NCBI GenBank assembly: GCA_965644315.1
Contig: CBFFRQ010000030.1
Coordinates: forward strand, 1 to 64,000
Reading direction: 5' to 3'
From: Caecitellus pseudoparvulus
Taxonomy: Eukaryota > Protista > Bigyra: Bicosoecida
Length of the DNA: 64,000 nt
The translations under genes and the position numbers were made by a program. Below are positions 5,357 through 47,617 of this stretch, piece after piece. The notes beneath the pieces were generated by a model. The model saw only the letters and a program-made list of their open reading frames with translations. It was not told where the DNA came from and ran no database searches. Each line of letters begins with the position of its first letter. The stretch's first letter is position 1.

Positions 5357-8278
5357 TTTCCAAATGTCAAGCTAATCACAAGTTGTGAAGTGCTAACATT
5401 GCCTAATCCAGGCGCTCGTGCACCCAAGTGTGGTGTTGCACAGTGCTTGCTGGTTGGGTGGTGCGCACCGGGGCGGGGTAGTGCGAATTCCGCACACCAT
5501 CGCACCGTGGCTCCCAGTTTGCGCCCTCGGTCGGGGCATGCACCTGGGATCGACATCAAAAGCATCATTGACAAGCATCATGAACGCCCAAGTGGATCAA
5601 GTCCTGGGGGTCCTCTTCGTGGAGGGGTGCCTGAAGCGCAAGCAAGTGCTCGGCCCCAGAACAGGTGTCTTCACTGACATGCCACGTCGGGGTGCCGCAC
5701 GCACCTTCGAGCTTGGAGGACCCCTGCCCAAGACTGATCATGATAGTTCATCTTCGGCACGGGACATGTGGCTCGAGGTCTATGGGGAAGCCGCCGAACG
5801 GCTGATCCCAGGGCTGAGTGCGGAATTCGGCAACGCCAATGCGGCCCTGCGCCAGGGACCCACCGGATCGCCAACCATCCTCGTCACGCTCGGAAGTGAG
5901 GGTGATTCACCAACAGTGGCACGTCAACTTCGCATTCTTGCTGCTCAAGAGGACGACTTCGCCATTCGAGTCGGCCAAGGTGGGTTCGTCGCCGTGGCCT
6001 ACACCAACACCAAGCAGTTCGCATCGGCGAAGGCGAAAGTGAAGGTGAAGGCCCACCCCACCGCCATCCAAGTGGCCCACCAAGTGACCAAGGAAGCAAC
6101 CGAAATCGCCTGCCAGTCAGGTGATGTTGCCAAGGTCATGTGCCTCGTTAGGTCCCACTTCGACCATGGCCCCGTGCCAGCCCAAGCCGTCCGTCCCAGT
6201 GTCAGACAATCCGTCCCCTCCGAGGGTGATGCACCTGTCGACACCAAGACACCATCGACCTGGACTGACACTCAGCTCGACAAGGCACCGAAGAAGAAGA
6301 AGACCCGTCGAGGCAAGCGAGGAAAGGGCAAGTCAGCCGGACGATCCCTCACCTTCGAGGACGTCTTCATCAAGAACGTCCGGCCACCTGCACCTCGACC
6401 AACCTCACCACCTGCCACCCAAGGCTCACCCAAAGATACCGTCACCACCCCTGTGGTGCATGCCATGTTGCCTTCATCAAGGGTGCAGCGGGGCGTCGAC
6501 CGCAAGTGGCCGTCCCCCACCCCGTCGGGCGAGGCAAGCCCCGAGGTGCACCGGTATCGGCCGTCTGCAGCAGCAGCATGGGAGGTGATCACAAGGGTGG
6601 TGCCTCTTCATGACAGTGTGCGGACACCCGAGCACCTGGCCGAGTACCCCATCAAGCCTGGCCCTCTGGCCGACCTGCTGTCATCGACCCACGTGTACTC
6701 TAACGTGGGGGGCGGGCCTGTGTCCAGGCCTGTCTCGAGACGGCAGCAGGGGAGAGGGTCTTCGAGGCTGGGGACCTCCTCCTACTCCAGCATGCAGCCA
6801 CCATCAACGCTGCCCAGCTTGCCTTCAAGCACATGGTCAGGCAGCTGGAGGGGGTGGTCAGTGACTCGTCCAGCTCGGACATCATGGACGTCGGCCAGAA
6901 GCCACCCTCCCCCTTCCGCTCAGACGGGCAACGGGTGGCCGTCTTCCGCAACATGCTGCACCAGCACTCGCCGGATGACACCTTCCTGGCCCCAGGTACA
7001 CCACCAGTCCTGCTTCCCGGCCTGCACCTGCTCATCGACCGCATCAACCAAGGGTACCGTGCCCCAGCCGGGCATGATGACCTTGGCCAGGCCGGCGTCG
7101 ACCCCAGCCAGGTTGATGAAGAGGGTGACCAAGAGGGGCACCTCGACGGAGTGCTGTATGCCTTCGCACTTCGAGAGGTGTGGACCGACAACACGGCCCA
7201 TCTGCAGCTCATCCTCGTCGACCATGATCGAGGCAAGCTGGTGCTGTGGAACCCCGACATCCCTGACCTCCATGACGAGCTGCCCCTGCACAAGTGCATG
7301 ACCCGGCTGGCAGCCGAAGGCATCAACGTCTTGTACCGGATCTGGACCACACCCGAGGCGGGCAGTCCAGCACCCTTCCGGGACAGGCTTCGAGGGGCAC
7401 TCCAGTCTCTCCGAGATGACTTCCCCCCCCTGCCTCACAAGGCCACCGACGGCACCGTGCACCCCCAGACCCTCATCGCTGGCAAGGGCACAAGGGTGGC
7501 CATGCCTCATGGGCGGATGACCCGACAGCAGGCCGCCACCCTGGAGGCTGAGGTCAAGGACCCCCTCAAGCGGCTGGTGCCTGAAGACGGCGAGGGTCGC
7601 CTGCCCAAGGTCAAGGATGTGCCCCACATCTCGATCGGGCAGATGGGTGGACGCCTGATGTAAGTCACCTGTGGGGGCATACTCCCTGTGCCACACATGA
7701 CTGAAGCTTTGTGTCGCGACCGACGCACATAGCTGACATCGGACATTGGAAAGTCCAACCCAACCTCACCATCACCAACCCAACATCGATACCAACACAT
7801 CAGGACTCGGCTCAGTGGAAGGGGAAGGCACTTGCAGCAAGATCTGTGAGGCCGCCCCCAAACCTGAGCCGAAGGGACAGCCGGGCTGGGTCGTGTGCTT
7901 GCATCTCAGCAACACCCAGTCCGTGTCGAGTCCATATCCTCCAGCCCACACCGCCACCCAAGCCAAGCAAGTCGGGTCTCCACCCCTGGACATCGGACCG
8001 AGACGGACGAGACTGGACTGGACGGACAAGACAAGAGTGGACCGAGACCTGGACCTACACCTCAAGACCATCCCACCGGGGCGGGCGCTGAAGCGCCAAG
8101 ACAGACGGCGACTTATACAACGGACACGAGTCTGTGCTAGTCGCAAAGCCGTGCAAGCGGTGCCGTCGTGGTGTCTGTGTCACTGCATTCTGTTGTGGCG
8201 CAGGTGGCACCACATGTCCAAGCCCAAGCTGTACCATGATGTAGCCTGCATGGAGGCAATCTGCAATGCATTGAGTAG
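5357..8278 (+). mobile_element. Telomeric retroelement A: short non-autonomous, ORF1-only relative of element B
   Basis: The 5' UTR (TGCTAACATTGCCTAATCCAGGCGCTCGTGCACCCAAGTGTGGTGTTGCACAGTG) is identical to that of B. The ORF is homologous to the B N-terminal region but stops where APE would begin. The last ~200 nt are homologous to the B 3' end and finish CAATGCATTG-AGTAG-CTAACCCTAACCCTAA. Confidence 0.85.
5580..7663 (+). CDS. Element A ORF1-like protein with putative papain/Josephin-like Cys protease domain; one frameshift at the G-run 6707-6712
   Basis: MNAQVDQVLGVLFV...FTDMPRRGAARTFELGG aligns with B MEAKTSQVLGALFV...FTDMPRRGAARTFELGG. After the G-run the other frame reads RACVQACLETAAG...AHLQLILVDHDRGKLVLWNPD...GGRLM*, collinear with B. 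The frameshift may be a homopolymer sequencing error. Confidence 0.8.
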
Positions 8279-8294
8279 CTAACCCTAACCCTAA
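8279..8294 (+). repeat. Interstitial telomeric spacer CTAACCCTAACCCTAA between elements A and B1
   Basis: Read directly at the junction ...TTGAGTAG|CTAACCCTAACCCTAA|TGTCAACC... Confidence 0.95.
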
Positions 8295-8505
8295 TGTCAA
8301 CCTAATCATAGGTTGTGCATTGCTAACATTGCCTAATCCAGGCGCTCGTGCACCCAAGTGTGGTGTTGCACAGTGTTTGGGTTGGCAGTGCAGCGCGCGG
8401 GTGGCAGCTGTGCGAATTCCGCACGCCATCACACCAGCGCAAGCAGTGTGCACTCCCCGCGGGAGTCTGCACCTGTGGATACCTGCATCACGTTCCATCA
8501 TCACC

Positions 8506-11500
8506 ATGGAAGCCAAGACAAGTCAAGTACTGGGTGCGCTCTTCGTGGATAAGTGCATTGCTGCGCGAGCAATGCGTGGACCAAGAACGGGCGGATTTAC
8601 TGACATGCCGCGCCGAGGCGCTGCACGAACGTTTGAGCTTGGCGGAGTGCCCATCGACGAAGACCCTTCAACATCTTCATCAACAATCCGAGATTCCTGG
8701 CTTCAAGTCTTTGGTGAGGCGGCGGAGGCCCAGTTCCCTGGCATCTGTGCGGAAGTTGGGCGTGGTGCAGCGGCGTTGCGCCGCCCACAAGGAACCCCAG
8801 CTGCCCTGCTAGTCTCGCTTGGCGGAGGAAGTGCCAGCGCAGAGCTGGCACGGAGCATACGCGAAGCAGCAGCACGTGAGGACGACTTCACTGTGCGCCT
8901 TGGACGAGGTGGCTTCATGGCTGTGGTGTTTCCAGACACACGCCAGTTCGCCAACGCCAAGGCCAAGGTGCAGGTGACTGCCTCGGCCCCAGTGCTCAAG
9001 GCGGCCCACCTCCTGATGCCCCAAGCCACGAAGATTGCTGTTGAGACAGGTGACGTAAGCTCAGTCGTGAAGCTCGTCAAGTCCCATCTTCATGGCCACT
9101 CGCCGCCTGCTCGTCAAGACCGCCACTTCGTCCGACATTCCGTCCCCGTCAAGGGCGACGCCGCTGTCGACAAAGTGAACCGGCCTGCTCCACCCAAGCC
9201 TGCCCACACTGCTCATCATGTGCCAGGCAAGCGCAAGAAGGTACGCCGAGGACAGCGCTCGAAGTCTTCGAAGCCATCCAATGTCGTGCCAGGACGAACG
9301 TTCGCTGACCTCTTCAAGACTCCCCCGTCCGAGCCCTCAGCAAGCCGACGCCCCTTCCGTACAGTGATGCCTGCCCCCACCACTTCACCGCGACCCACGA
9401 CGGAGGTTGTCCTTCCATCCTCTCGGGTGCGCACTGGGGCTAGCACGCGATGGGACCAACCGCCAACTGCTGAGCAAGACTCAAAGCAACAACACCATGC
9501 CCAGTCAGCAGCCCAACCCGCTCAGGCACCCAGCACTGAAACGGCCAGGACTTTGTTTGTTGGTGCAGACAAGCCAAGTGTCAAGTCTGAACCGCAGGCA
9601 TGCGACACGTTGGACATGCCAGACTCATCACCACCCTCCCCAGGAATCGTTGAAGTCGTTCGGATGGAAGACTGCAGCAGGCTCCCAGCGGATCTCCCAA
9701 GACACAGAATCCCAACTGGGTCCCCGCTGGAACGCCTCCTTGCATCAAGCACAGTAGCTGGCAACCTTTCCGAGCGCCACTGTGTGCAAGCATGTCTGGA
9801 AACTGCAGCGGGTGCTCAGGTGCTGGAGCCCGAGGATCTTCTCCTCCTCCAACACGCAGCCACAGTGGAAGCAGCGCAACGCGCATTCAAAACCCTGCGC
9901 AAGCGAGAGGCTGCAGCCCTGTCTGACTCGTCCAGCTCGGATGTCCAGTGCCTGGCGCCGACTAGAGGCGTGGCCTCTTCGGATCCCGAGGACCAGCTAG
10001 CAGCATTGGCCCGACTGCTGTACCGGTTCACTCCGGATGACTCGCTGCTGCAGCCCACGTCTCCCCCAGTGCTTCTGCCAGGTCTCCACATGCTGCTGAA
10101 CCGTATCAATGTTGGGCATGAAGACCTGCATGGCGGGAACAAGCACCATGGCGGTGTGAGTCCACAAGCGGTTGTGGACGAGGACGAGCAAGAGCGGTAC
10201 TTCCATGGCGTCCACTTCGCCTTTGCTCTCCACCGGCCCCAACAAGTCCACGCTGCCCACCTGACTCTCATACTGGCTGACCATGACCGTGGAGTCCTTG
10301 TCCTATGGAACCCAGACACACCTGATGCATGCACTGAGCTGCCCATGCACAAGTGTATGCAGAGACTCTACGATGACGCAGTGGACATGGTGTACAGAGT
10401 GTCGGCAACCCCCCACACCGGGAACCCAGTCCCTCTTTGTGACAGGATCCGAGACATATTCCACAGTCTGCGCCAGTCCTTCCCTCCCCTTCCCTTTGTG
10501 GACCACGAGGGGGCTGTCCACCTCAAGACGTTCATCGCGGGGAAGTCTACCAGGGTCACCATTCAAGCAGGCCGGCTCACTCGAGCACAGGCCTCTGCAG
10601 CAAGTGAGGCAAAGGAGCGCGACCCTCTGTTCCAACTCATTCCATCAGACGAGGATGCCATGCCCCCGAGGTGGGAGCAGAGTCCGTACACACCAGTGGG
10701 AAAGTCCAGCAGCATCCCAGTGTCGCTCGTGTCATGGAATGTTGCTGGGTCGTGTGGCCGCAACCTGCACAAGGTTCTCATCTGCGCCCAGTCTGTGTGC
10801 CTCCGTTCATCCAGACTGGTCCTCTGCCTCACGGAACCTGGTGGCCACGGCACACTTGACTCGGAAGTCATGGGGCTCCAATGTTTCAGGCCCTCCCCCC
10901 CAGATCGTCCACCCGGTCGCAGTGAAGTTGCGCTTCTGGTCGACCGTCGTCTACGCGCCACGCAGATAGTCAACCTTGGACTCGATGGGCGCTGTGTGGT
11001 CGCCTGCTCCATCCCCATGAAGCCAAGGCCCCTTGCTGTTATCGCGGCCTACGTGCCCAACTGGCACACGGCCCAGCGGAAGAAGCCACTTGCAGACCCA
11101 GACACTAAGCTGCCCCACCGCCAAGAGGTCTGGGAGCAGCTGGCCAACGCTGTAAAAAGTCTGCGAACCACGCATATGATCTCCCTCATGGGGGACCTCA
11201 ACTGCCATCCTGGTGATGGCGGACTTCCTGCTTGGGACGCAACATGCTGGCAGAACCGGACCGATGTCGCTGACCCCATCCCAGATGTCAAGGAGCTCGC
11301 AATCGTGTGCGAGCATGGTAACCTCGAGCCAGCCGGGCTCGCCGGGTGCTCCACCCATGCCACGAACGGCAGAGCCCTGGACCACATCCTTGTCTGCCCA
11401 CTGCTCAAGGCCCAGGTCAAGGTGCCACACACAGTGACGACAACCTTCTCCAGTGCAGGCAAGCAGAATCCGGAGAAGTCGATCCTGAGTGACCACTACC

Positions 11501-12276: not shown

Positions 12277-15215
12277 AGTTCGGACTGGGCCGGCTGCTCC
12301 CATCGGCCCCGACCCACATGTCGACTGAAGCCGCCTGGACCCCGAGCGTGGACCATATCCTGAAGAAGATCCAGTCCCTGAGCCTCCACCGCAACCCTGG
12401 CACAGGGCACTACCAGGCTGAGCATGTCAAGTATGCCAGCGAGGACTTCCGGAAGAGGTACGCTGCCGCTCTTCAACAGGCCATCAGCACCGGTTCATGT
12501 CCAAGTCAGTACCACAGTGGGGTGGGGACACTCATCCCCAAGACCGCCAGCCAGGCCGGGAGGGTGCAGACATACAGGCTCATTGTCTGCCGTCCCCCCC
12601 AAGCCAAGCTCTTCTTCTCGGTCGTGGCCTCATGTGTCGAAGACTGGGTGCAGCACTGGATCTCACATGAGCAGGCAGGCTTCACCCATGCCCGCAACAC
12701 CCACGAGCAGATCCTGGCCTTGCAGGAGGTGTCCACTGCCCACCTGCGCGCCAAGCCCACTGCCAGTGTCCTTGTCCTTTTCGTGGACTTCAAGAGTGCC
12801 TTTGACACTGTCAGCCACGAAGCGATACCCGAGATCCTCGAGTCAGCAAGCCTCCCACAGCCCCTGCTCAGCTGCGTGAAGGACTACATGCAGCGCGCCA
12901 CAGTGGCCATTCACACTGGCCATGGTCTTTGCGACCCCCTCCCAGTCACCAACGGGGTCCCCCAGGGTGGCGCACTGTCGCCTCTGTTGTTCAAGGTGGC
13001 TATTGATGTGCTCTCTCAACGCCTGAGAGAGCTGCCAAGTCAGGGAGTGTCAGGGGCAGGAGTGCCGACACCCCGCGGCCACGTCACGCATACGCTCTAT
13101 GCGGACGATCTTGCTTGCCTCGCCACCACCCCTGCTGCCCTCCATCGGATGTTCCTTGAAGTCAAGGCCCTGGGCAGCCGGGTGGGCTTGGCCATCAACC
13201 CGCGCAAGTCCGGGGTCATGGTCCTCACCGGGGCGCAACAGGTCAATGGGGTGTCAGCCACGGAGCGGCGGAAGCTCATCTGGCGGTCCCGCTGGCTGAG
13301 GTCAGGGCAGTCCATGAAGGTCAAGGGGACACCCATCCAACGCACGAGCACCTACTCGTACTTGGGTGTCCCCCTGTCTGAAACTGTCAGCCGAACCCGA
13401 CTGCTTGCCACGAGGCAGGCCACTCTGTCCTGCACTCGGGCTGGGTTCGGCTGCGGTGCCCTCCTCAGTAGTGCGTGGCTGAGTCCGATCCTGAAGCAGC
13501 GGATCGGCACTGCCTCCATCAACAGTGCCGCCGACTACATCTTGGCGTCCCAGGTCAGCAACTCGGTGCTACCTTTGCGGGACGTCGATCGTGGACTTGC
13601 CATCGCCTTCAGCAAGGCCCAGCTGGGGATGCAAAGCTCGCTAGCACGTATGCACAACTATGCAAAGCTTGCTGTGTGCGGCGTCTTGCCAACACACATC
13701 CGGGCGACGAAACTCCGCAGCATTATCTTCATGAAGCTGCTGAAGAATGTCCAAGTGCCCACCCCCATGGCCAAGGCGCTGTCCATCAGCCTGCGCCAAG
13801 CCCTGGACCTGCTGCCCTCCCCCCTGGACATGGCCAGCATCTTCCTGGCCAATGTCCGCCTCGACAGGCCAGGCGCTGGAGGCATCCCAGATCCATGGGC
13901 CTTACACGGTCTACTCGACCTCTGGCTCCTTGGATGCCTCCCTGACCGCGCACGCCTGGAGGCTGTGTGCCTGGAGCCGCCGCCTGACTCTGCCCCAGAC
14001 ACACACGGGGTCGACATCACCGCTGGGATGGACCCCGCCCCCCCCAAGATCCAGCTGCTTGGACTCGCGGCAGCGGAGTCCTCAGATCTGTCGGCTGCCC
14101 CCCAGTTCCCGGACACCACCCCCTGGGCCACTCGGCAACGCGTCGTCGCCTCCTTCCTTCATGTGGCCCAGACGGTCAAGTGCGGTGCAGTTGGCTACAC
14201 TCCCACGGGGGAGATGAAGGCCACCAGGCGTCCGAAGGAGTACCACATCGGTGTGGGTGCTCGCTTCTTCGCCTGGCTGCACCCGATCCCTTCCTCTGTG
14301 AACCCAGTCTTCTGGGTCCACGAAGGCGATCAGGAGAGACGTGTGAAGGTGCACCTGTGGCAGACGCTTCAAGTGTTCAACGGGGATGACACCCCGACAC
14401 TGTTCAGCGCCTGCCCCCTGTGCCACAGCGTCTCCTGGTGCAGCCTGCAGGAGCACGTCCTTCTTGACTGCCCCCACCACGCCCTGGTCCCTGCGAGAAG
14501 GTCCGCCCTGTCAGAGGTGCGGAACCTCCTGTCCAGATCCAATGATGCAGTGAGGGGGGTCGCCAACTGCCAGTACCTCGAAGTACCCCCCCCACTGCTG
14601 GATGCTGTTGTCCACGCCGACGAAGGCCGCTTGTTGGGCCGCCCGTGTCGCCTGCTGCTGCTGCGACTGCTGCTGTGCGGCCAGTGGCCCCATCGGTGGG
14701 GCCAGCCTCCGGCACAACAGCCCTGGAGTCCCGAGGCAGCCGCGGTCCTGAGTAACCCCCATGTCACTCTCCGCGGCTCCTCGGGTCCACTCCGCCCCCC
14801 CAAGTACTGGCGCGAGGCCCTGGTAGCTGCCACGGGCCTCGCGGTATCTGCGTGGGACGCGGTGGTGACGTGCATGCTCAGCCTTACCTCTCGTGCCGAC
14901 CGTCACATCCAGAGGCACGCCCGGTACCTCTGGTGGGCGGCGCATGGACGAACGTGTCCTCTCCCAGGTTACTCGGCTCCTGATCCGAGTACTGTGAGGA
15001 AGCATGTGCGGGACGTGAAGACGCGGCGCTTCGAGCGCACTTACTTCCCTGTCAAGTCCCCTCGTCGGCCGCCTCGCTCCTTCACGAGGCAGGCCACCTT
15101 GCTCGACTTCGGGCTGGCACGGCCGGAAGTCCACGAGGAACCTCCGGCACCGTCGATTTCATCCTCGGCGTCGTCCTCTGGGTCGTCCTTGAAGTGTCCA
15201 TCTGACTCTGAGTAG
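12267..15215 (+). CDS. Element B1 reverse transcriptase plus C-terminal CCHC zinc knuckle (-1 frame relative to the APE ORF)
   Basis: LINE RT motifs YRLI, QAGF, FVDFKSAFDTVSH, GVPQGGALSPLLF, LYADD, INPRKS and YLGV are present. The CCHC is CPLC-x10-H-x4-C at ~14412-14470. Confidence 0.95.
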   Translation: MSLKFGLGRLLPSAPTHMSTEAAWTPSVDHILKKIQSLSLHRNPGTGHYQAEHVKYASEDFRKRYAAALQQAISTGSCPSQYHSGVGTLIPKTASQAGRVQTYRLIVCRPPQAKLFFSVVASCVEDWVQHWISHEQAGFTHARNTHEQILALQEVSTAHLRAKPTASVLVLFVDFKSAFDTVSHEAIPEILESASLPQPLLSCVKDYMQRATVAIHTGHGLCDPLPVTNGVPQGGALSPLLFKVAIDVLSQRLRELPSQGVSGAGVPTPRGHVTHTLYADDLACLATTPAALHRMFLEVKALGSRVGLAINPRKSGVMVLTGAQQVNGVSATERRKLIWRSRWLRSGQSMKVKGTPIQRTSTYSYLGVPLSETVSRTRLLATRQATLSCTRAGFGCGALLSSAWLSPILKQRIGTASINSAADYILASQVSNSVLPLRDVDRGLAIAFSKAQLGMQSSLARMHNYAKLAVCGVLPTHIRATKLRSIIFMKLLKNVQVPTPMAKALSISLRQALDLLPSPLDMASIFLANVRLDRPGAGGIPDPWALHGLLDLWLLGCLPDRARLEAVCLEPPPDSAPDTHGVDITAGMDPAPPKIQLLGLAAAESSDLSAAPQFPDTTPWATRQRVVASFLHVAQTVKCGAVGYTPTGEMKATRRPKEYHIGVGARFFAWLHPIPSSVNPVFWVHEGDQERRVKVHLWQTLQVFNGDDTPTLFSACPLCHSVSWCSLQEHVLLDCPHHALVPARRSALSEVRNLLSRSNDAVRGVANCQYLEVPPPLLDAVVHADEGRLLGRPCRLLLLRLLLCGQWPHRWGQPPAQQPWSPEAAAVLSNPHVTLRGSSGPLRPPKYWREALVAATGLAVSAWDAVVTCMLSLTSRADRHIQRHARYLWWAAHGRTCPLPGYSAPDPSTVRKHVRDVKTRRFERTYFPVKSPRRPPRSFTRQATLLDFGLARPEVHEEPPAPSISSSASSSGSSLKCPSDSE

Positions 15216-16050: not shown

Positions 16051-19000
16051 TGTCAACCTAATCATAGGTTGTGCATTGCTAACATTGCCTAATCCAGGCG
16101 CTCGTGCACCCAAGTGTGGTGTTGCACAGTGTTTGGGTTGGCAGTGCAGCGCGCGGGTGGCAGCTGTGCGAATTCCGCACGCCATCACACCAGCGCAAGC
16201 AGTGTGCACTCCCCGCGGGAGTCTGCACCTGTGGATACCTGCATCACGTTCCATCATCACCATGGAAGCCAAGACAAGTCAAGTACTGGGTGCGCTCTTC
16301 GTGGATAAGTGCATTGCTGCGCGAGCAATGCGTGGACCAAGAACGGGCGGATTTACTGACATGCCGCGCCGAGGCGCTGCACGAACGTTTGAGCTTGGCG
16401 GAGTGCCCATCGACGAAGACCCTTCAACATCTTCATCAACAATCCGAGATTCCTGGCTTCAAGTCTTTGGTGAGGCGGCGGAGGCCCAGTTCCCTGGCAT
16501 CTGTGCGGAAGTTGGGCGTGGTGCAGCGGCGTTGCGCCGCCCACAAGGAACCCCAGCTGCCCTGCTAGTCTCGCTTGGCGGAGGAAGTGCCAGCGCAGAG
16601 CTGGCACGGAGCATACGCGAAGCAGCAGCACGTGAGGACGACTTCACTGTGCGCCTTGGACGAGGTGGCTTCATGGCTGTGGTGTTTCCAGACACACGCC
16701 AGTTCGCCAACGCCAAGGCCAAGGTGCAGGTGACTGCCTCGGCCCCAGTGCTCAAGGCGGCCCACCTCCTGATGCCCCAAGCCACGAAGATTGCTGTTGA
16801 GACAGGTGACGTAAGCTCAGTCGTGAAGCTCGTCAAGTCCCATCTTCATGGCCACTCGCCGCCTGCTCGTCAAGACCGCCACTTCGTCCGACATTCCGTC
16901 CCCGTCAAGGGCGACGCCGCTGTCGACAAAGTGAACCGGCCTGCTCCACCCAAGCCTGCCCACACTGCTCATCATGTGCCAGGCAAGCGCAAGAAGGTAC
17001 GCCGAGGACAGCGCTCGAAGTCTTCGAAGCCATCCAATGTCGTGCCAGGACGAACGTTCGCTGACCTCTTCAAGACTCCCCCGTCCGAGCCCTCAGCAAG
17101 CCGACGCCCCTTCCGTACAGTGATGCCTGCCCCCACCACTTCACCGCGACCCACGACGGAGGTTGTCCTTCCATCCTCTCGGGTGCGCACTGGGGCTAGC
17201 ACGCGATGGGACCAACCGCCAACTGCTGAGCAAGACTCAAAGCAACAACACCATGCCCAGTCAGCAGCCCAACCCGCTCAGGCACCCAGCACTGAAACGG
17301 CCAGGACTTTGTTTGTTGGTGCAGACAAGCCAAGTGTCAAGTCTGAACCGCAGGCATGCGACACGTTGGACATGCCAGACTCATCACCACCCTCCCCAGG
17401 AATCGTTGAAGTCGTTCGGATGGAAGACTGCAGCAGGCTCCCAGCGGATCTCCCAAGACACAGAATCCCAACTGGGTCCCCGCTGGAACGCCTCCTTGCA
17501 TCAAGCACAGTAGCTGGCAACCTTTCCGAGCGCCACTGTGTGCAAGCATGTCTGGAAACTGCAGCGGGTGCTCAGGTGCTGGAGCCCGAGGATCTTCTCC
17601 TCCTCCAACACGCAGCCACAGTGGAAGCAGCGCAACGCGCATTCAAAACCCTGCGCAAGCGAGAGGCTGCAGCCCTGTCTGACTCGTCCAGCTCGGATGT
17701 CCAGTGCCTGGCGCCGACTAGAGGCGTGGCCTCTTCGGATCCCGAGGACCAGCTAGCAGCATTGGCCCGACTGCTGTACCGGTTCACTCCGGATGACTCG
17801 CTGCTGCAGCCCACGTCTCCCCCAGTGCTTCTGCCAGGTCTCCACATGCTGCTGAACCGTATCAATGTTGGGCATGAAGACCTGCATGGCGGGAACAAGC
17901 ACCATGGCGGTGTGAGTCCACAAGCGGTTGTGGACGAGGACGAGCAAGAGCGGTACTTCCATGGCGTCCACTTCGCCTTTGCTCTCCACCGGCCCCAACA
18001 AGTCCACGCTGCCCACCTGACTCTCATACTGGCTGACCATGACCGTGGAGTCCTTGTCCTATGGAACCCAGACACACCTGATGCATGCACTGAGCTGCCC
18101 ATGCACAAGTGTATGCAGAGACTCTACGATGACGCAGTGGACATGGTGTACAGAGTGTCGGCAACCCCCACACCGGGAACCCAGTCCCTCTTTGTGACAG
18201 GATCCGAGACATATTCCACAGTCTGCGCCAGTCCTTCCCTCCCCTTCCCTTTGTGGACCACGAGGGGGCTGTCCACCTCAAGACGTTCATCGCGGGGAAG
18301 TCTACCAGGGTCACCATTCAAGCAGGCCGGCTCACTCGAGCACAGGCCTCTGCAGCAAGTGAGGCAAAGGAGCGCGACCCTCTGTTCCAACTCATTCCAT
18401 CAGACGAGGATGCCATGCCCCCGAGGTGGGAGCAGAGTCCGTACACACCAGTGGGAAAGTCCAGCAGCATCCCAGTGTCGCTCGTGTCATGGAATGTTGC
18501 TGGGTCGTGTGGCCGCAACCTGCACAAGGTTCTCATCTGCGCCCAGTCTGTGTGCCTCCGTTCATCCAGACTGGTCCTCTGCCTCACGGAACCTGGTGGC
18601 CACGGCACACTTGACTCGGAAGTCATGGGGCTCCAATGTTTCAGGCCCTCCCCCCCAGATCGTCCACCCGGTCGCAGTGAAGTTGCGCTTCTGGTCGACC
18701 GTCGTCTACGCGCCACGCAGATAGTCAACCTTGGACTCGATGGGCGCTGTGTGGTCGCCTGCTCCATCCCCATGAAGCCAAGGCCCCTTGCTGTTATCGC
18801 GGCCTACGTGCCCAACTGGCACACGGCCCAGCGGAAGAAGCCACTTGCAGACCCAGACACTAAGCTGCCCCACCGCCAAGAGGTCTGGGAGCAGCTGGCC
18901 AACGCTGTAAAAAGTCTGCGAACCACGCATATGATCTCCCTCATGGGGGACCTCAACTGCCATCCTGGTGATGGCGGACTTCCTGCTTGGGACGCAACAT

Positions 19001-22000
19001 GCTGGCAGAACCGGACCGATGTCGCTGACCCCATCCCAGATGTCAAGGAGCTCGCAATCGTGTGCGAGCATGGTAACCTCGAGCCAGCCGGGCTCGCCGG
19101 GTGCTCCACCCATGCCACGAACGGCAGAGCCCTGGACCACATCCTTGTCTGCCCACTGCTCAAGGCCCAGGTCAAGGTGCCACACACAGTGACGACAACC
19201 TTCTCCAGTGCAGGCAAGCAGAATCCGGAGAAGTCGATCCTGAGTGACCACTACCTCCTGTCAGCAACAGTCCAAGTTGTGATCCCTCCACGGCCAAAGG
19301 GTGCCCGGCATGCCCACTCTTCCTTCTCTGTGCCGCCATGGTGGGCATCATCTACACGTGAAGGGCGCAGGGCACAGACCTTGCACAGGCGGCTGCTTGA
19401 CTCATCCATCACTGGTGCCGCATCCCCCCACCCGGCCAAGCTGCAGACACCCTGCTGTCAGGCCTGGATGATTTGGTTGCCGACGCTGCCCGACAAGCCC
19501 ATGCCAAGTGCAAAGTTGTGGCACCCCCGCTGCTTCAGGCCCTTGCCGACATTCGCACCCTCAGCTCTGTCAAGAAGCGGATGACAGTGAGGACAGGGCG
19601 GATCAAGAAGCAACTCCGCAAGCTTCATCGACGCCGGCACCTTCTTCAGCATAGCCAGTCACCCCATGCCCCAGCTGACCTACGTTGTGCGGATGAACGA
19701 AAGCACATGCTCATGGAGGACCTTGCTGCCACCCATGTTGAAAGGAAGAAGGCGATGCGCAAGTGTACTCGGCTGGTTGCCAAGAAACACAAGGCCGCCA
19801 TGTTCCAAGTCCAGCAGCGCATCCGGGACCTTGCCCGGCTTGACCCCTTCACTGCTCACCTGCATGTGCGGAAGCTGTCCGGCAGAAGGAGGAAGGGCAC
19901 TTCGTCGTCCATCCAGTCAGTCATGGACGACAGCGGCACCCTCATCACAGACCCATCACAAGTGCGGGCTGTGGTCAGGGACCAGATGGCCCAGATCATC
20001 AGCCCCCTCCACGGCAAGTCGTGTCCCTGAAGTTCGGACTGGGCCGGCTGCTCCCATCGGCCCCGACCCACATGTCGACTGAAGCCGCCTGGACCCCGAG
20101 CGTGGACCATATCCTGAAGAAGATCCAGTCCCTGAGCCTCCACCGCAACCCTGGCACAGGGCACTACCAGGCTGAGCATGTCAAGTATGCCAGCGAGGAC
20201 TTCCGGAAGAGGTACGCTGCCGCTCTTCAACAGGCCATCAGCACCGGTTCATGTCCAAGTCAGTACCACAGTGGGGTGGGGACACTCATCCCCAAGACCG
20301 CCAGCCAGGCCGGGAGGGTGCAGACATACAGGCTCATTGTCTGCCGTCCCCCCAAGCCAAGCTCTTCTTCTCGGTCGTGGCCTCATGTGTCGAAGACTGG
20401 GTGCAGCACTGGATCTCACATGAGCAGGCAGGCTTCACCCATGCCCGCAACACCCACGAGCAGATCCTGGCCTTGCAGGAGGTGTCCACTGCCCACCTGC
20501 GCGCCAAGCCCACTGCCAGTGTCCTTGTCCTTTTCGTGGACTTCAAGAGTGCCTTTGACACTGTCAGCCACGAAGCGATACTCGAGATCCTCGAGTCAGC
20601 AAGCCTCCCACAGCCCCTGCTCAGCTGCGTGAAGGACTACATGCAGCGCGCCACAGTGGCCATTCACACTGGCCATGGTCTTTGCGACCCCCTCCCAGTC
20701 ACCAACGGGGTCCCCCAGGGTGGCGCACTGTCGCCTCTGTTGTTCAAGGTGGCTATTGATGTGCTCTCTCAACGCCTGAGAGAGCTGCCAAGTCAGGGAG
20801 TGTCAGGGGCAGGAGTGCCGACACCCCGCGGCCACGTCACGCATACGCTCTATGCGGACGATCTTGCTTGCCTCGCCACCACCCCTGCTGCCCTCCATCG
20901 GATGTTCCTTGAAGTCAAGGCCCTGGGCAGCCGGGTGGGCTTGGCCATCAACCCGCGCAAGTCCGGGGTCATGGTCCTCACCGGGGCGCAACAGGTCAAT
21001 GGGGTGTCAGCCACGGAGCGGCGGAAGCTCATCTGGCGGTCCCGCTGGCTGAGGTCAGGGCAGTCCATGAAGGTCAAGGGGACACCCATCCAACGCACGA
21101 GCACCTACTCGTACTTGGGTGTCCCCCTGTCTGAAACTGTCAGCCGAACCCGACTGCTTGCCACGAGGCAGGCCACTCTGTCCTGCACTCGGGCTGGGTT
21201 CGGCTGCGGTGCCCTCCTCAGTAGTGCGTGGCTGAGTCCGATCCTGAAGCAGCGGATCGGCACTGCCTCCATCAACAGTGCCGCCGACTACATCTTGGCG
21301 TCCCAGGTCAGCAACTCGGTGCTACCTTTGCGGGACGTCGATCGTGGACTTGCCATCGCCTTCAGCAAGGCCCAGCTGGGGATGCAAAGCTCGCTAGCAC
21401 GTATGCACAACTATGCAAAGCTTGCTGTGTGCGGCGTCTTGCCAACACACATCCGGGCGACGAAACTCCGCAGCATTATCTTCATGAAGCTGCTGAAGAA
21501 TGTCCAAGTGCCCACCCCCATGGCCAAGGCGCTGTCCATCAGCCTGCGCCAAGCCCTGGACCTGCTGCCCTCCCCCCTGGACATGGCCAGCATCTTCCTG
21601 GCCAATGTCCGCCTCGACAGGCCAGGCGCTGGAGGCATCCCAGATCCATGGGCCTTACACGGTCTACTCGACCTCTGGCTCCTTGGATGCCTCCCTGACC
21701 GCGCACGCCTGGAGGCTGTGTGCCTGGAGCCGCCGCCTGACTCTGCCCCAGACACACACGGGGTCGACATCACCGCTGGGATGGACCCCGCCCCCCCCAA
21801 GATCCAGCTGCTTGGACTCGCGGCAGCGGAGTCCTCAGATCTGTCGGCTGCCCCCCAGTTCCCGGACACCACCCCCTGGGCCACTCGGCAACGCGTCGTC
21901 GCCTCCTTCCTTCATGTGGCCCAGACGGTCAAGTGCGGTGCAGTTGGCTACACTCCCACGGGGGAGATGAAGGCCACCAGGCGTCCGAAGGAGTACCACA

Positions 22001-23796
22001 TCGGTGTGGGTGCTCGCTTCTTCGCCTGGCTGCACCCGATCCCTTCCTCTGTGAACCCAGTCTTCTGGGTCCACGAAGGCGATCAGGAGAGACGTGTGAA
22101 GGTGCACCTGTGGCAGACGCTTCAAGTGTTCAACGGGGATGACACCCCGACACTGTTCAGCGCCTGCCCCCTGTGCCACAGCGTCTCCTGGTGCAGCCTG
22201 CAGGAGCACGTCCTTCTTGACTGCCCCCACCACGCCCTGGTCCCTGCGAGAAGGTCCGCCCTGTCAGAGGTGCGGAACCTCCTGTCCAGATCCAATGATG
22301 CAGTGAGGGGGTCGCCAACTGCCAGTACCTCGAAGTACCCCCCACTGCTGGATGCTGTTGTCCACGCCGACGAAGGCCGCTTGTTGGGCCGCCCGTGTCG
22401 CCTGCTGCTGCTGCGACTGCTGCTGTGCGGCCAGTGGCCCCATCGGTGGGGCCAGCCTCCGGCACAACAGCCCTGGAGTCCCGAGGCAGCCGCGGTCCTG
22501 AGTAACCCCCATGTCACTCTCCGCGGCTCCTCGGGTCCACTCCGCCCCCCCAAGTACTGGCGCGGGGGCCGGGTAGCTGCCACGGGCCTCGCGGTATCTG
22601 CGTGGGACGCGGTGGTGACGTGCATGCTCAGCCTTACCTCTCGTGCCGACCGTCACATCCAGAGGCACGCCCGGTACCTCTGGTGGGCGGCGCATGGACG
22701 AACGTGTCCTCTCCCAGGTTACTCGGCTCCTGATCCGAGTACTGTGAGGAAGCATGTGCGGGACGTGAAGACGCGGCGCTTCGAGCGCACTTACTTCCCT
22801 GTCAAGTCCCCTCGTCGGCCGCCTCGCTCCTTCACGAGGCAGGCCACCTTGCTCGACTTCGGGCTGGCACGGCCGGAAGTCCACGAGGAACCTCCGGCAC
22901 CGTCGATTTCATCCTCGGCGTCGTCCTCTGGGTCGTCCTTGAAGTGTCCATCTGACTCTGAGTAGCGGGCGATGTGTGTAGAGCGCGGCGCGAGGCGGTG
23001 CAAGCTTACGGCGTGGCGTGGTGACAACCACGGTCGTGGCTGAGCGAAGTGCGAGAGCAGGGTGATGTGATGTCCTTGATGAATGACGGAACCTGCGGAA
23101 AGTTGGAAGATGATGAAGTGAATATGTCCAGTATACTTACATGATGGCTCGGGGTCCACGTGCAGCCCGAGATAGATTCCTGTGACGGGGCGCGCGGAAT
23201 TTGGCAGGGTGAACACGCGGGCGCGCGGGGCAACGTCGCAGGCGGGGCGCACAGGTCCTCAGGGCCTTGAGTGATGAGTCAGCTGGATTATCTGTGAAGA
23301 AAAGGAGGTGTTCTTGGTGTTCTTGGTGCGCGGGTGGCGTTGTTCCGGCGGTGCGCGCTGCTACCACCGGCGTGGTGCAGTGCAACACCGTCGTGAAACG
23401 CCACCCGAAGGCGGCCACTGCGGCTCAGGACAGCGCGCAGTGGCCCCAGGCACACGTGCAGTGCCTGGCAAGGGCCAGGAGAAGCGGGGGGTTTCTGAAT
23501 TATGAAGCGAAGTGTGGACTGGAACGAAGCAAGAGTGGGCCCGGCCCCCTCTGGCTCAGCCGACTGAGCCGAGAGGGCGCGGGCGGGGCAGTTCGACACG
23601 TATGGGCGGGCGCGGGCGCGCCCTAGCAAGCGGCGGCTCATACAACGGACGTATGTCCGTGATGGCTGCAGACCCACGAGAGTGGGAGCCGCTGTAGCGC
23701 TCCTGGTGTGCCTTGTGCACAGCAGCGAACGCTACATGTGATGCCCAAGCTGTATCGCGTGCAAGCGTGAAGGCGACATGCAATGCATTGAATGAA
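16051..23796 (+). mobile_element. Telomeric non-LTR retrotransposon B, copy 2 (near-identical tandem copy with homopolymer frameshifts)
   Basis: Same sequence as B1 except 1-2 nt deletions in C/G runs (~18165, ~19425, ~20348, ~22308, ~22338), C>T at 20582 and a short patch at ~22565-22571. Followed by CTAACCCTAACC (23797-23808). Confidence 0.95.
16262..22965 (+). pseudogene. Element B2 protease-APE-RT coding region, fragmented by frameshifts (possibly assembly artefacts)
   Basis: ORF pieces 16076-18724, 18253-19584, 19473-20030, 20021-20632 and 20251-22965 tile the B1 proteins. Confidence 0.8.
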
Positions 23797-23808
23797 CTAA
23801 CCCTAACC
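23797..23808 (+). repeat. Telomeric junction CTAACCCTAACC between the retroelement array and subtelomeric DNA
   Basis: Read directly: ...AATGAA|CTAACCCTAACC|TGCCCACTTCAG. Confidence 0.9.
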
Positions 23809-46427: not shown

Positions 46428-46786
46428 GCTTCTTCGACGCTGTTTGGCCTGCCCAGGCTCCACGCCGGGCCGATTGCGGGTTCCTGCGCTCGACAGGGTT
46501 CCACGACAAATCCATACCGGTTGCATGCTCATTCTTCCAAGTGGGTCAAGGGGGTGGTTGTGAATTGCGTGGGCGGCGTGTATGAAAAACAAGCTTTTAG
46601 CCAATCCGAAGCGTACGACGCTGCCCGAGCACTGCCCATCTCTGCCAGCCACCCCAGCGCAACATCCAACTACATGCCCAAAATCTCGTGCTTCTCAGGA
46701 GCGCAGCGGGCCCACTGAGGCTCGCATCACAGCCACACTCGCTTGCCTAGCCGCCGGAACTCTGCATGCGCCCGCCACCCAGACAC

Positions 46787-47237: not shown

Positions 47238-47617
47238 GGCTGGCGTTGCTGGACGAGTGGTGCTTGCTGTGAGTGCTCTCGCGCCTCGCAAGATGGCAGC
47301 AAAGCTTCTGAAAAGACGACAACTCCACAACTGCAAGCGAAACTTTGTGGCGGTGTGTTGATTTTGATTCCACCAGAATTGCACCCATCATTCCACGCGC
47401 TCTCCCGGCACCACCTCACAGCTGTGCAGTTCACGCTCTTCCCCATATCCAGCTTGGCGCCCACACCTCCCCTGCGCCCATTGCGGACTAACTGCCACCC
47501 CCAAGTAGTACCTGCGCCCCAACACGTCTCATCCTTCCCTTTGCTGCTCCTGCCTCACTTCAAAAACCCACCGCCACCTGGCGGACCACGACTCTCTCCT
47601 CTGCTCCCAACTCCACC

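What the first reader, a model, noticed from the sequence alone, without database searches (positions are those of the whole stretch)
5357..23808. Telomere-specific retrotransposon system: head-to-tail autonomous and non-autonomous LINE-like elements capped by telomere
Seen: three full-length elements (A, B1, B2) lie directly inside a 5.3-kb telomere, all with 5' ends toward the chromosome end. They have no poly(A) tails and every junction consists of telomeric bases: CTAACCCTAACCCTAA at 8279, CTAA at 16047 and CTAACCCTAACC at 23797. All three 5' ends start at the same point (AA|TGTCAA), so none is 5'-truncated. Known: this orientation and arrangement parallels Drosophila HeT-A/TART/TAHRE, Magnaporthe MoTeR1/2, Bombyx TRAS and Athena/Terminon elements. 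Inference: this is a telomere-targeted family that primes on the G-rich strand using a 3' CUAACCCUAA tail, with or without an APE nick, and coexists with telomerase. I do not recognise this combination of protease, APE and RT, with an ORF1-only partner and a structured 3' end, from any described telomeric family.
Basis: partly seen in the sequence, partly recalled or inferred. Interest (0 to 1): 0.93.

Follow-up and report, generated by a model that had tools for sequence, protein, structure and literature searches.

The report
Telomere-specific LINE family in a protist
The chromosome end in this window, like about 70 other contig ends of this marine protist genome, carries head-to-tail stacks of a previously undescribed jumping-gene family that copies itself only onto telomeres, a close parallel to the telomere elements of fruit flies and the rice blast fungus.

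Summary
A perfect 5.36-kb (TAACCC)n telomere is followed by a 2.9-kb element A and two near-identical 7.75-kb elements B1 and B2. All are sense on the C-strand with 5' ends outward. None has poly(A). They are joined by 16, 4 and 12 telomeric bases.

B is a non-LTR retrotransposon. Other copies show one ORF of about 2,240 aa: an unknown N-domain, a papain-fold protease-like domain, APE, RT and a CCHC motif. A encodes only a homologue of the N-terminal ~795 aa. The frame breaks in the window copies are differences in homopolymer length.

In the 30.6-Mb assembly I found over 45 A copies at ~100% identity and at least five autonomous lineages. All 135 3' ends are followed by CTAA. Every A or B copy with a known contig length lies within ~15 kb of a contig end, in one orientation. 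5' truncations and 9-26-nt abortive stubs inside telomere repeats indicate target-primed reverse transcription. The 3' UTR structure covaries, and the first ~86 nt are 90-98% identical across lineages. A TERT gene is present.

Corrections: B1 and B2 lack the usual CTTTCCAAA 5' start, and the design is one ORF, not ORF1 plus ORF2. No named relative was found. I rate it a new variant of a known kind. First readers noted the same stacks on other pieces of this genome.

The parts
1..5356 (.). Terminal telomere array (TAACCC)n; the C-rich strand reads inward from the chromosome end
   Evidence: period 6, 892.7 copies, 100% matches.
5356..8278 (+). Element A, a non-autonomous 2.9-kb element. The full-length 5' start is CTTTCCAAA-TGTCAAGCTAATCA and the 3' end is ...GCAATGCATTGAGTAG
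   Evidence: More than 45 copies at about 100% identity sit at other contig ends, plus 5'-truncated copies.
5580..7663 (+). A coding region, homologous to the N-terminal ~795 aa of the B polyprotein. In this copy the frame shifts at a G6 run near 6706-6712; other copies and independent contigs have one more G and a continuous ORF of 694 aa from the ATG
   Evidence: 38-47% aa identity to B; 755-codon open frames in L003, L004, L012; extra G at 6706 in runs X1, X5, X9; P0166, 694 aa.
8279..8294 (+). A-to-B1 junction CTAACCCTAACCCTAA. The first CTAA(CC) is probably the templated 3' tail of A
   Evidence: The same 16-nt junction between an A-like and a B-like element occurs in metagenome contig L063.
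8295..16046 (+). Element B1, an autonomous 7.75-kb non-LTR retrotransposon. It starts at TGTCAACCTAATCA, without the CTTTCCAAA extension, and ends ...GCAATGCATTGAATGAA
8506..15215 (+). B1 coding region, one polyprotein of about 2,240 aa. In this copy it is split into 8320-12276 and 12267-15215 at a C5 run at 12249-12253. The C34 copy has one more C there, and the C105 copy has an uninterrupted frame of at least 2,201 codons
9631..10680 (+). Papain-fold, Josephin-like cysteine-protease-like domain, also present in A. Cys (CVQAC), His (AHLxL) and WNPD are invariant in the six sequences aligned
   Evidence: alignment A2; pLDDT 70, pTM 0.71; VIA Z 7.1, 6.8, 6.6 to Josephin-type DUBs and staphopain; nearly all top rows are papain-fold.
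10732..11496 (+). Apurinic/apyrimidinic-type endonuclease domain with motifs SWNV, CLTE, GDLN, LDHI and SDH
   Evidence: PF03372, E 1.4e-6, above cut-off; motifs kept in almost every lineage checked; a few patterns did not match in L013, P0017 and P0019.
12534..13373 (+). Reverse transcriptase domain (GVPQG, YADD)
   Evidence: PF00078, E 8e-31; human L1 ORF2p and R2 at E about 1e-16.
14412..14477 (+). C-terminal CPxC...H...C zinc-knuckle-like motif
   Evidence: present in 6 of the 8 frames that include this region, among them P0017 and P0019.
15880..16046 (+). Structured 3' UTR module shared by all lineages, ending in the palindrome-containing motif CAATGCATTGA
   Evidence: 38 pairs, 96.9% paired, 11 pairs with compensatory change, 0 of 500 shuffles reach it, slid controls 23-50% paired.
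16047..16050 (+). B1-to-B2 junction, CTAA only
16051..23796 (+). Element B2, a tandem copy of B1 with 4 substitutions and 6 homopolymer indels that break the frame in this assembly
23797..23808 (+). Proximal junction CTAACCCTAACC, then non-element DNA
   Evidence: 23809-24931 is a 76% copy of window 43043-44159.
28553..29270 (+). Older relic of a related family (about 715 bp, about 90% identity among more than 20 contig ends), ending CAATGCATTGAACTTC + CTAACC
29274..29428 (+). 5'-truncated old A-like 3' fragment (96% to 8130-8284) with a CTAACC tail, at the inner edge of the subtelomere

Best explanation
This is an active, telomere-restricted family of non-LTR (LINE-like) retrotransposons in a telomerase-positive marine protist.

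The autonomous elements (B and at least four other lineages) encode one polyprotein. It runs from an N-terminal domain of unknown fold, through a basic linker and a papain-fold protease-like domain, to an APE endonuclease, reverse transcriptase and a CCHC motif. Element A encodes only the N-terminal half. It shares the conserved 5' ~86 nt and the structured 3' module, so it is probably mobilised in trans by a B-type RT, as HeT-A is by TART/TAHRE or MoTeR2 by MoTeR1.

Inferred mechanism:
1. The RNA ends in the structured 3' UTR plus a short telomeric tail, ...CAAUGCAUUGA-N4-6-CUAA(CC...).
2. This tail pairs with a G-strand 3' end that terminates in ...TTAG.
3. RT extends that DNA end along the RNA. 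This places the element sense strand on the C-strand with its 5' end outward.
4. Telomerase, or the next element, then extends from the cDNA end ...TTTGGAAAG, giving the fixed CCCTAA|CTTTCCAAA junction.

The telomeric tracts proximal to the elements are very short (median about 14 nt, against terminal arrays of 0.45-5.3 kb). Some joins are direct to non-telomeric DNA or to a naked element 5' end. I therefore think most additions happen on short or uncapped chromosome ends, or by template jumping, rather than at random nicks in long arrays. This last step is inference.
For: Shown:
- APE and RT domains with intact catalytic motifs in every lineage.
- One long ORF in other copies.
- A is homologous to B residues 27-795.
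- 135 3' ends are all followed by CTAA, against 0 for the control.
- In 45 sampled 3' junctions the telomeric tract is 5-66 nt in 42 cases and 222-547 nt in 3.
- There are 40 telomere-to-5'-end junctions, nearly all in one phase.
- All plus-strand copies lie within about 22 kb of contig starts. All 13 minus-strand contigs checked have their copies within about 15 kb of the contig end.
- Four further contig ends are capped by 450-1650 bp of telomere directly on an element 5' end.
- 5'-truncated A copies share the constant 3' end.
- Abortive 3' stubs of 9-26 nt are embedded in telomere repeats.
- A-to-A joins occur with only CTAA between the copies (L004).
- The 3' structure shows compensatory changes.
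- The 5' terminal ~86 nt are 90-98% identical among lineages whose proteins are 40-55% identical.
- Independent assemblies show the same joints, and other organisms carry 93-97% relatives.
- A related 3,724-aa element lies on a contig that begins with CCCTAA repeats, in the same orientation.
- A TERT RNA-binding domain lies in a 1,389-codon frame on C77.
Against: - No RNA data: no listed run is RNA. Transcription, the true RNA 3' tail and the 5' start are therefore inferred from DNA junctions.
- The own-genome searches score only the best 40 candidates, so weak internal copies could be missed.
- An older related family has at least one copy far from a contig start (C18:155164).
- Subtelomeric recombination or break-induced replication can also spread identical copies between ends, as shown for MoTeRs (PMC7367193).
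- APE conservation would fit nicking inside arrays. The short proximal tracts could then be survivorship, because long interstitial telomeres break.
- The protease assignment rests on a middling structural Z of about 7.
Confidence: 0.85

Rival explanations
1. Same family, different entry route. The APE domain makes a sequence-specific nick (TTAG^GG) in double-stranded telomere repeats anywhere in the array, as TRAS1/SART1 do. Target-primed reverse transcription then inserts the element inside the telomere. Short proximal tracts are what survives, because insertions that leave long interstitial telomeres break and are lost.
For: - APE catalytic motifs are conserved in all lineages and in distant relatives.
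- The 3' junction phase is constant.
- Three junctions have 222-547 nt of proximal repeats.
- MoTeR work shows that interstitial tracts of three or more repeats are fragile (PMC7367193).
Against: - At least 15 of 45 sampled junctions have 8 or fewer telomeric bases before non-telomeric DNA or another element. That is too short to be a repeat-array target.
- A-to-A and B1-to-B2 joins have only CTAA between the copies.
- Drosophila TART and TAHRE also keep an APE although they attach to ends (background knowledge). APE conservation is therefore not decisive.
Confidence: 0.35
2. The elements did arise by retrotransposition. However, the present distribution (dozens of 100%-identical copies, tandem pairs such as B1-B2) is produced mainly by recombination among chromosome ends. 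Routes would be break-induced replication, unequal exchange or D-loop or rolling-circle extension, with little or no ongoing transposition.
For: - Copies are about 100% identical across ends.
- Same-family tandem pairs are common, e.g. C44, C211, C133, C128, C12 and C18.
- The identical 16-nt A-to-B junction recurs in this window and in metagenome contig L063.
- BIR-driven array growth is documented for MoTeRs (PMC7367193).
Against: - Junction tract lengths and the neighbouring sequences differ from end to end.
- There are many independent 5' truncation points with a constant 3' end.
- Abortive stubs of 9-26 nt occur.
- Open reading frames and catalytic motifs are intact in several lineages.
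Confidence: 0.12
3. The stack is an assembly artefact: long-read mis-joins or collapsed or expanded repeats at contig ends.
For: - The assembly has homopolymer-length errors.
- Many element-bearing contigs are short, and some end inside elements (L007, L010).
Against: - The same architecture recurs at about 70 contigs.
- k-mer contigs of four other runs, including other organisms, reproduce the element sequences, the telomere flanks and the A-to-A joints.
- An unrelated metagenome assembly holds telomere-A-junction-B.
Confidence: 0.03

Closest known systems
MoTeR1/MoTeR2 of Magnaporthe oryzae and FoTeRs of Fusarium oxysporum
   Same: These elements are inserted in (TTAGGG)n telomeres of a telomerase-positive host, with 5' ends always toward the chromosome end. 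They form head-to-tail homo- or heterogeneous arrays separated by half a repeat to about 20 repeats. They have no poly(A). An autonomous element is paired with a shorter partner that shares its 5' and 3' termini. 5'-truncated copies occur (PMC7367193, PMC12857005).
   Different: MoTeR and FoTeR RTs carry a C-terminal restriction-like endonuclease and group with the SLACS/CRE elements. Here the endonuclease is an APE placed N-terminal to RT. MoTeR 5' ends carry long TTCGGG(TTTGGG)n variant repeats. Here the 5' end is a unique, ultra-conserved ~86-nt module. MoTeR2's internal sequence is unrelated and has no obvious function. Here A encodes a conserved homologue of the polyprotein N-terminus.
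HeT-A / TART / TAHRE of Drosophila (background knowledge; PMC5537684 seen only in the result list, not opened)
   Same: Head-to-tail terminal arrays have the 3' ends toward the centromere. An abundant partner without RT (HeT-A, Gag only) accompanies RT-encoding elements. Several lineages share the telomere niche. Additions are made to chromosome ends, including broken ones.
   Different: Drosophila lacks telomerase and telomeric repeats, and its elements have poly(A) tails and zinc-knuckle Gag ORFs separate from pol. Here telomerase repeats cap and separate the elements, a TERT gene is present, there is no poly(A), there is one polyprotein, and the N-terminal part looks like a protease rather than Gag.
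TRAS1 / SART1 of Bombyx mori (R1 clade; background knowledge)
   Same: These are APE-encoding LINEs specific for telomeric repeats, with fixed orientation and insertion phase. Recognition depends on the 3' UTR, and downstream telomeric bases help annealing.
   Different: TRAS and SART have two ORFs and poly(A) tails, and they insert inside long arrays. Here there is a single ORF, no poly(A), and mostly very short proximal repeat tracts. The RT shows no specific affinity to any named clade in my searches.
Endonuclease-deficient Penelope-like elements (Athena, Coprina) and Terminons
   Same: These are restricted to chromosome termini. Short reverse-complement telomeric repeats at the 3' end are thought to pair with the G-overhang. 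They coexist with telomerase (PMC8557442 abstract; background knowledge).
   Different: Those elements lack an endonuclease and have PLE-type RTs. This family has a conserved APE and a LINE-type RT (Pfam RVT_1; best solved matches are L1 ORF2p and R2).
[quoted passage not shown]
   Same: They set a precedent for a cysteine protease domain at the N-terminus of a site-specific non-LTR polyprotein (PMC4640811).
   Different: Those are restriction-like-endonuclease elements that target spliced-leader or U2 genes, and their protease is Ulp1-like. Here the fold matches Josephin, staphopain and C39-type papain folds, and no Pfam protease family is detected.

Membership tests
Non-LTR (LINE-type) retrotransposon with APE endonuclease | Reverse transcriptase domain with the YxDD catalytic motif | tested here: met
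   PF00078 at E 8e-31. YADD and GVPQG are present in all lineages. L1 ORF2p and R2 match at E about 1e-16.
Non-LTR (LINE-type) retrotransposon with APE endonuclease | APE-type endonuclease N-terminal to RT with catalytic residues | tested here: met
   PF03372 at 28.6 bits against a cut-off of 24.5. The motifs WN, TE, GDLN, LDHI and SDH are conserved.
Non-LTR (LINE-type) retrotransposon with APE endonuclease | No terminal repeats; variable 5' truncation with a constant 3' end | tested here: met
   The only long direct repeats are the tandem copies themselves. A copies are truncated at 233, 515, 1015, 1172, 2412, 2745, 2812 and 2889, and all reach the 3' end.
Non-LTR (LINE-type) retrotransposon with APE endonuclease | Assignment to a named RT clade (L1, Tx1, R1, RTE, I, Jockey, CR1, ingi, Dualen...) | tested here: inconclusive
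   No reference clade sequences were available. Beyond its own family the best hits are 23-31% identical in the RT core. They are a mix of Exo_endo_phos and Exo_endo_phos_2 elements from animals and algae.
Telomere-specific retrotransposon (functional class) | Copies confined to chromosome ends | tested here: met
   All A and B hits are near contig starts on the plus strand, or within about 15 kb of the end in all 13 minus-strand contigs measured. Limits: only 40 candidates are scored per search, and an older related family has an inner copy at C18:155164.
Telomere-specific retrotransposon (functional class) | Single orientation relative to the telomere and a fixed repeat phase at the junctions | tested here: met
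   Plus-strand hits lie at contig starts and minus-strand hits at contig ends. The 3' end is always ...|CTAA(CCC...), with 135 hits against 0 for the control. The 5' junction is CCCTAA|CTTTCCAAA in about 30 of 36 distinct junctions.
Telomere-specific retrotransposon (functional class) | Demonstrated transposition to telomeres (new insertions, RNA intermediate) | not testable with these tools
   No RNA run is listed. There are no time-series data.
TRAS/SART (R1 clade) | Two ORFs (Gag-like ORF1 plus pol) and a poly(A) tail | tested here: not met
   There is a single polyprotein and no poly(A) at any junction.
MoTeR/FoTeR (CRE-like) | Restriction-enzyme-like endonuclease C-terminal to RT; telomere-like variant repeats at the 5' end | tested here: not met
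   Pfam finds only APE upstream of RT. The 5' end is unique sequence. The family features are taken from PMC7367193 and PMC12857005.
HeT-A/TART/TAHRE (Jockey clade) | Poly(A) tails, separate Gag ORF, host without telomerase repeats | tested here: not met
   There is no poly(A). Perfect TTAGGG arrays cap the stacks. A TERT RBD hit is present.
Penelope-like EN-minus telomeric elements (Athena/Terminon) | No endonuclease, or a GIY-YIG one; PLE-type RT | tested here: not met
   A conserved APE is present.
Dualen/RandI | Both APE and a restriction-like endonuclease, plus RNase H | tested here: inconclusive
   Pfam at E up to 0.01 finds no RNase H or second nuclease. However, about 600 aa C-terminal to RT were not folded or searched by structure.
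Papain-fold cysteine protease / deubiquitinase | Papain-like fold with Cys at a helix N-terminus, then His on a strand, then Asn or Asp | tested here: inconclusive
   The model has pLDDT 70 and pTM 0.71. The top structural matches are almost all papain-fold, at Z 5-7.1, below the tool's Z 8 caution line. Foldseek E is 0.03 or higher. Invariant C51/C55 lie on helix 51-60, H210 lies just before strand 211-217, and N227/D229 follow strand 222-226. No activity data exist.

The most novel reading that the evidence does not exclude
The elements are not just tolerated passengers but work as a second, telomerase-cooperating end-repair system. On this reading they are added preferentially to critically short or broken chromosome ends, which would explain proximal tracts of 4-16 nt and direct joins to unique DNA. 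Their ultra-conserved 5' ~86 nt, with three CTAA-type telomere-like motifs, would then serve as the seed on which telomerase rebuilds a cap. The abundant A element's protease-like N-terminal protein would be the telomere-targeting or capping factor, a non-Gag analogue of HeT-A Gag. That would be a HeT-A/TART-like mutualism caught in a telomerase-positive protist.
Probability: 0.25. Interest if true: 0.85.

Novelty: new variant of a known kind. Interest (0 to 1): 0.66.

Why it matters
Telomere-specialised retrotransposons are the textbook case of a selfish element turning into, or competing with, a chromosome-maintenance system. The well-studied cases are few: Drosophila, Bombyx and Magnaporthe.

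Here a marine protist carries a very young family on about 70 contig ends. Copies are about 100% identical and reading frames are open. The family has at least five deep lineages that all share the telomere niche, an RT-less partner about nine times more abundant than the autonomous element examined, and telomerase still present.

It is an independent replicate of the HeT-A/TART and MoTeR1/2 design built from different parts: APE rather than a restriction-like nuclease, a papain-fold domain rather than Gag, and a telomeric tail rather than poly(A). This makes several questions testable in a small genome:
- how such elements recognise chromosome ends;
- whether they prime on free ends or on nicks;
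- how they share the end with telomerase.

The relatives in coral and seawater metagenomes suggest the family is widespread in marine protists.

Tried and rejected
- **Rfam.** A permissive scan of 5300-30000 found no known ribozyme or RNA family. A self-cleaving HDV-like or hammerhead ribozyme that would explain the precise 5' ends is therefore not supported, though a novel one is not excluded.
- **N-terminal domain.** AlphaFold failed for B residues 63-287 (pLDDT 35). The Atlas feature search gave only low-overlap bacterial hypothetical proteins. Its fold remains unknown.
- **RT clade.** No named references were available. PDB matches to L1 ORF2p and R2 are equally weak. The cluster names of the best outside hits are uninformative, and their Pfam nuclease types are mixed.
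- **Host identity.** The host PolA-family gene only matched a 98% copy labelled 'Symbiodinium sp. KB8', probably a contaminant of that culture assembly, and bacterial PolI at about 30%. Run names are coded. I can only say it is a marine, intron-poor protist.
- **Programmed frameshifting.** I considered this between the two window ORFs of B and within A, and rejected it. The shifts sit in C5 and G6 runs, and other copies and independent contigs have one more base there.
- **Fetching all contig ends.** I used search-derived loci instead.
- **Papers.** Four searches found no description of this family.

Full report
**1. What is in the window**

The window starts with 5,356 bases of perfect (TAACCC)n: 892.7 copies at 100% match. 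It is the start of contig C30 of a 30.6-Mb, 215-contig assembly, so it is a chromosome end read on its C-rich strand.

Three elements follow directly.
- Element A spans 5356-8278.
- The bases CTAACCCTAACCCTAA (8279-8294) join A to B1.
- B1 spans 8295-16046 and is followed by CTAA (16047-16050).
- B2 spans 16051-23796 and is followed by CTAACCCTAACC (23797-23808).
- Non-element DNA comes next.

No element has a poly(A) tail. B1 and B2 differ by four substitutions and six single-base indels, and every indel lies in a C or G run.

One point needs correction. A has CTTTCCAAA before the shared TGTCAA, and B1 and B2 do not. That 9-nt extension is the normal full-length start in the genome, so B1 and B2 are 9 nt short at their 5' ends.

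**2. What the elements encode**

Pfam finds an Exo_endo_phos (APE) domain and an RVT_1 reverse transcriptase in B. In the window, B1 reads as two overlapping frames. Other copies show this is not real:
- the C34 copy has one more C in the C5 run at 12249-12253, and its frame runs across the joint;
- the 97%-identical C105 copy has an uninterrupted frame of at least 2,201 codons;
- the more distant lineages and the outside relatives P0017 (2,150 aa) and P0019 (3,724 aa) are single ORFs as well.

The autonomous element is therefore one polyprotein of about 2,240 aa.

The APE motifs (SWNV, CLTE, GDLN, LDHI, SDH) and the RT motifs (GVPQG, YADD) are kept in almost all lineages and relatives, and a C-terminal CPxC...H...C motif in most of those that reach it.

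Element A encodes a homologue of B residues 27-795, at 38-47% identity, and nothing else. Its frame break in the window sits at a G6 run. Copies on other contigs have an open 755-codon frame. k-mer contigs of three other runs all carry one more G there. An independent metagenome assembly predicts an intact 694-aa protein that is 97% identical.

I made these comparisons between natural copies only. No sequence was edited or repaired.

**3. The 'protease'**

No Pfam protease family matches. An AlphaFold model of B residues 438-787, built on an alignment of six natural sequences, reached pLDDT 70 and pTM 0.71.

The exhaustive structural search put papain-fold enzymes in almost every top row. These include Josephin-type deubiquitinases (Z 7.1 and 6.8), staphopain (Z 6.6), C39 peptidases, calpain and streptopain. 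Foldseek's weak hits are of the same fold.

The invariant residues sit where a papain-type triad would: Cys in CVQAC on a helix, His just before a strand, and Asn/Asp in WNPD after the next strand. The Z values are below the tool's own caution line of 8. I call this a protease-like domain, supported by fold but unproven.

The first 225 residues could not be modelled and gave no useful Atlas lead.

**4. Genome-wide test of telomere specificity**

Element A has more than 45 copies at about 100% identity. The B-type RT has copies at 100%, 97%, 75% and 69-70% nucleotide identity. At protein level there are at least five autonomous lineages, 42-98% identical to B in RT.

Every plus-strand hit lies within about 22 kb of a contig start. 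I obtained contig lengths for all 13 contigs with minus-strand hits, and in each the copies lie within about 15 kb of the contig end.

The shared 3' motif CAATGCATTGA-N4-5-CTAA occurs 135 times against 0 for the reversed control, with at least nine tail subtypes. The pattern 'three telomere repeats, up to 12 bases, TGTCAASCTAATCA' occurs 40 times against 0. All hits are near contig ends, and about 30 of 36 distinct junctions read CCCTAA|CTTTCCAAATGTCAA.

Four further contig ends that I could read are capped by 450-1650 bp of telomere sitting directly on an element 5' end. About 70 contigs carry family members.

One older relative is a ~715-bp family of about 90% identity that ends in ...ACTTC-CTAA. 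It tends to sit at the inner edge of stacks, as at 28553-29270 here. It has at least one copy far from a contig start, at C18:155164. That copy is itself followed by CCCTAA and a truncated A-like fragment, so it looks like a buried former end.

**5. Evidence for reverse transcription primed at the 3' end**

A copies are 5'-truncated at many different points but always reach the same 3' end.

Tiny 3' stubs are embedded in telomere repeats:
- 25-26 nt just outside full-length copies on C187 and C140;
- CATTGAGTAG in L012;
- TTGAATGAA in L016.

They look like aborted reverse-transcription events that were then re-extended.

After the 3' end, the telomeric tract is 5-66 nt in 42 of 45 sampled junctions (median about 14 nt) and 222-547 nt in three. 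It is followed by another element's 5' end, by a truncated element, or by unique DNA. The shortest tails are CTAA and CTAACC, so at least CUAA(CC) is probably part of the RNA.

Orientation fits extension of the G-strand 3' end. Copying the RNA from a ...TTAG-3' primer puts the sense strand on the C-strand with its 5' end outward, as observed.

**6. Conserved RNA ends**

The last ~170 nt of seven lineage representatives fold into a common 38-pair structure. In it, 96.9% of cells are paired, against 23-50% when partners are slid. Eleven pairs show compensatory change, and 0 of 500 shuffles reach that value. The caveats are that there are only seven sequences and that the structure was derived from them.

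The first ~86 nt are 90-98% identical among A, B, B' and a lineage whose protein is only about 43% identical to B. The rest of the 5' UTR is 53-63% identical. This module contains three CTAA-type motifs. No Rfam family, including self-cleaving ribozymes, matches anywhere in the stack.

**7. Independent data**

Contigs of four public runs were laid on 5366-11300.
- They reproduce A and B exactly in the same organism, with A at about nine times the k-mer depth of B.
- They show A-to-A head-to-tail joints in two runs.
- They show telomeric loose ends at the A 3' end.
- Two other organisms carry relatives at 90-99% identity, one of them with AACTTTCCA in front of the B-like 5' end.

A metagenome contig (L063) reads telomere repeats, an A-like element (97%), CTAACCCTAACCCTAA, then a B'-like 5' end. 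A 3,724-aa relative lies on a contig that begins with CCCTAA repeats, in the same orientation. All listed holders are DNA, and many are marine, seawater, coral or aquaculture metagenomes. This rules out an assembly artefact.

**8. Host and telomerase**

The rest of the window holds long intron-free ORFs: an arginyl-tRNA-protein transferase, a 3,086-aa ankyrin-RBR protein and a family-A DNA polymerase. The polymerase is 98% identical to an entry labelled Symbiodinium sp. KB8, probably a culture contaminant there. I could not name the organism.

A Telomerase_RBD hit (79 bits) in a 1,389-codon frame on C77 and the perfect terminal arrays show that telomerase is present.

**9. Mechanism and rivals**

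The best-supported reading is a telomere-restricted LINE family that uses target-primed reverse transcription from a TTAG-ended G-strand paired with a CUAA(CC) RNA tail. A is mobilised in trans through the shared ends.

What remains open is the source of the primer.
- The very short proximal tracts, the direct joins to unique DNA and the element-to-element joins with only CTAA favour addition to short or uncapped ends, or template jumping.
- The conserved APE and three long proximal tracts favour nicking inside arrays. Survivorship would then explain the short tracts, because long interstitial telomeres are fragile, as shown for MoTeRs (PMC7367193).
- Recombination between ends surely contributes to spread, but it cannot explain the diversity of truncation points, stubs and junctions.

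**10. Comparison and novelty**

In design the system is nearest to MoTeR1/MoTeR2 and FoTeRs. These share the orientation, the head-to-tail arrays with half to about 20 repeats between copies, the lack of poly(A), and an autonomous element plus a partner with shared ends (PMC7367193, PMC12857005). It is also close to HeT-A/TART.

It fails the defining features of each of those families:
- its nuclease is an APE, not a restriction-like endonuclease;
- it has a single polyprotein, not Gag plus pol;
- it has a telomeric tail, not poly(A);
- telomerase is present.

N-terminal cysteine proteases are known in NeSL and Utopia elements, but those are Ulp1-like and belong to a different element type (PMC4640811).

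Protein searches of 5.8 and 1.8 billion sequences found only unnamed metagenomic relatives. Beyond those, RT cores are 23-31% identical. Four paper searches found no description.

I therefore class it as a new variant of a known kind: a real, active and unusually clean telomeric retrotransposon system, new as a family and in its parts but not in principle. First readers of this scan noted the same stacks, and a 29-bp 3' stub, on other pieces of this genome. My results agree with both notes.

Noticed in passing
window 23809-24931 and 43043-44159: The DNA just inside the element stack is a 76%-identical copy of part of the arginyl-tRNA-protein transferase gene (42573-44774, minus strand) 19 kb further in. 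This is a subtelomeric segmental duplication of a host gene fragment.
   Followed up: partly
window 28553-29428: Two older family relics lie at the inner edge of the subtelomere. One is a ~715-bp element ending CAATGCATTGAACTTC-CTAACC, about 90% identical to copies on more than 20 contig ends. The other is a 155-bp A-like 3' fragment. A 279-aa minus-strand ORF (28417-29256) overlaps the first relic.
   Followed up: partly
G000:C18:155164-155183 (locus L048): A copy of the ACTTC-tail family lies 155 kb from a contig start on the plus strand. It is followed by CCCTAA and a truncated A-like fragment. It may be a buried former chromosome end, a fusion or a mis-join.
   Followed up: partly
L006, L041, L045 (start): The string CTAACC-GGCAAGGAG recurs after telomeric bases in this genome and at the start of the foreign contig L045. 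It may be the 5' end of yet another telomere-attached element family.
   Followed up: no
window 57040-60483: A family-A DNA polymerase ORF (1,147 aa) is 98% identical to an NCBI protein labelled 'polA, partial [Symbiodinium sp. KB8]'. The next best hits are bacterial PolI at about 30%. That dinoflagellate assembly probably contains contaminant DNA of this protist or a close relative.
   Followed up: partly
window 46100-47600: Long intron-free ORFs run on the minus strand from 29.5 to 46 kb and on the plus strand from 47.6 to 60.5 kb. This is a divergent strand-switch that resembles polycistronic gene clusters. The host taxon is not determined.
   Followed up: no
window 10409, 11669, 12249, 12594, 14554, 14586, 6706: The assembly carries systematic single-base length errors in C and G homopolymer runs of 5-8. 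These create false frameshifts in repeated elements. The same is likely elsewhere in this genome.
   Followed up: yes
G000:C77:25738-26142 (minus): A candidate telomerase reverse transcriptase gene: a Telomerase_RBD hit of 79 bits inside a 1,389-codon open frame.
   Followed up: partly
window 8002-8042: A short 19-nt tandem repeat (2.2 copies) lies in the A 3' UTR. Its significance is unknown.
   Followed up: no
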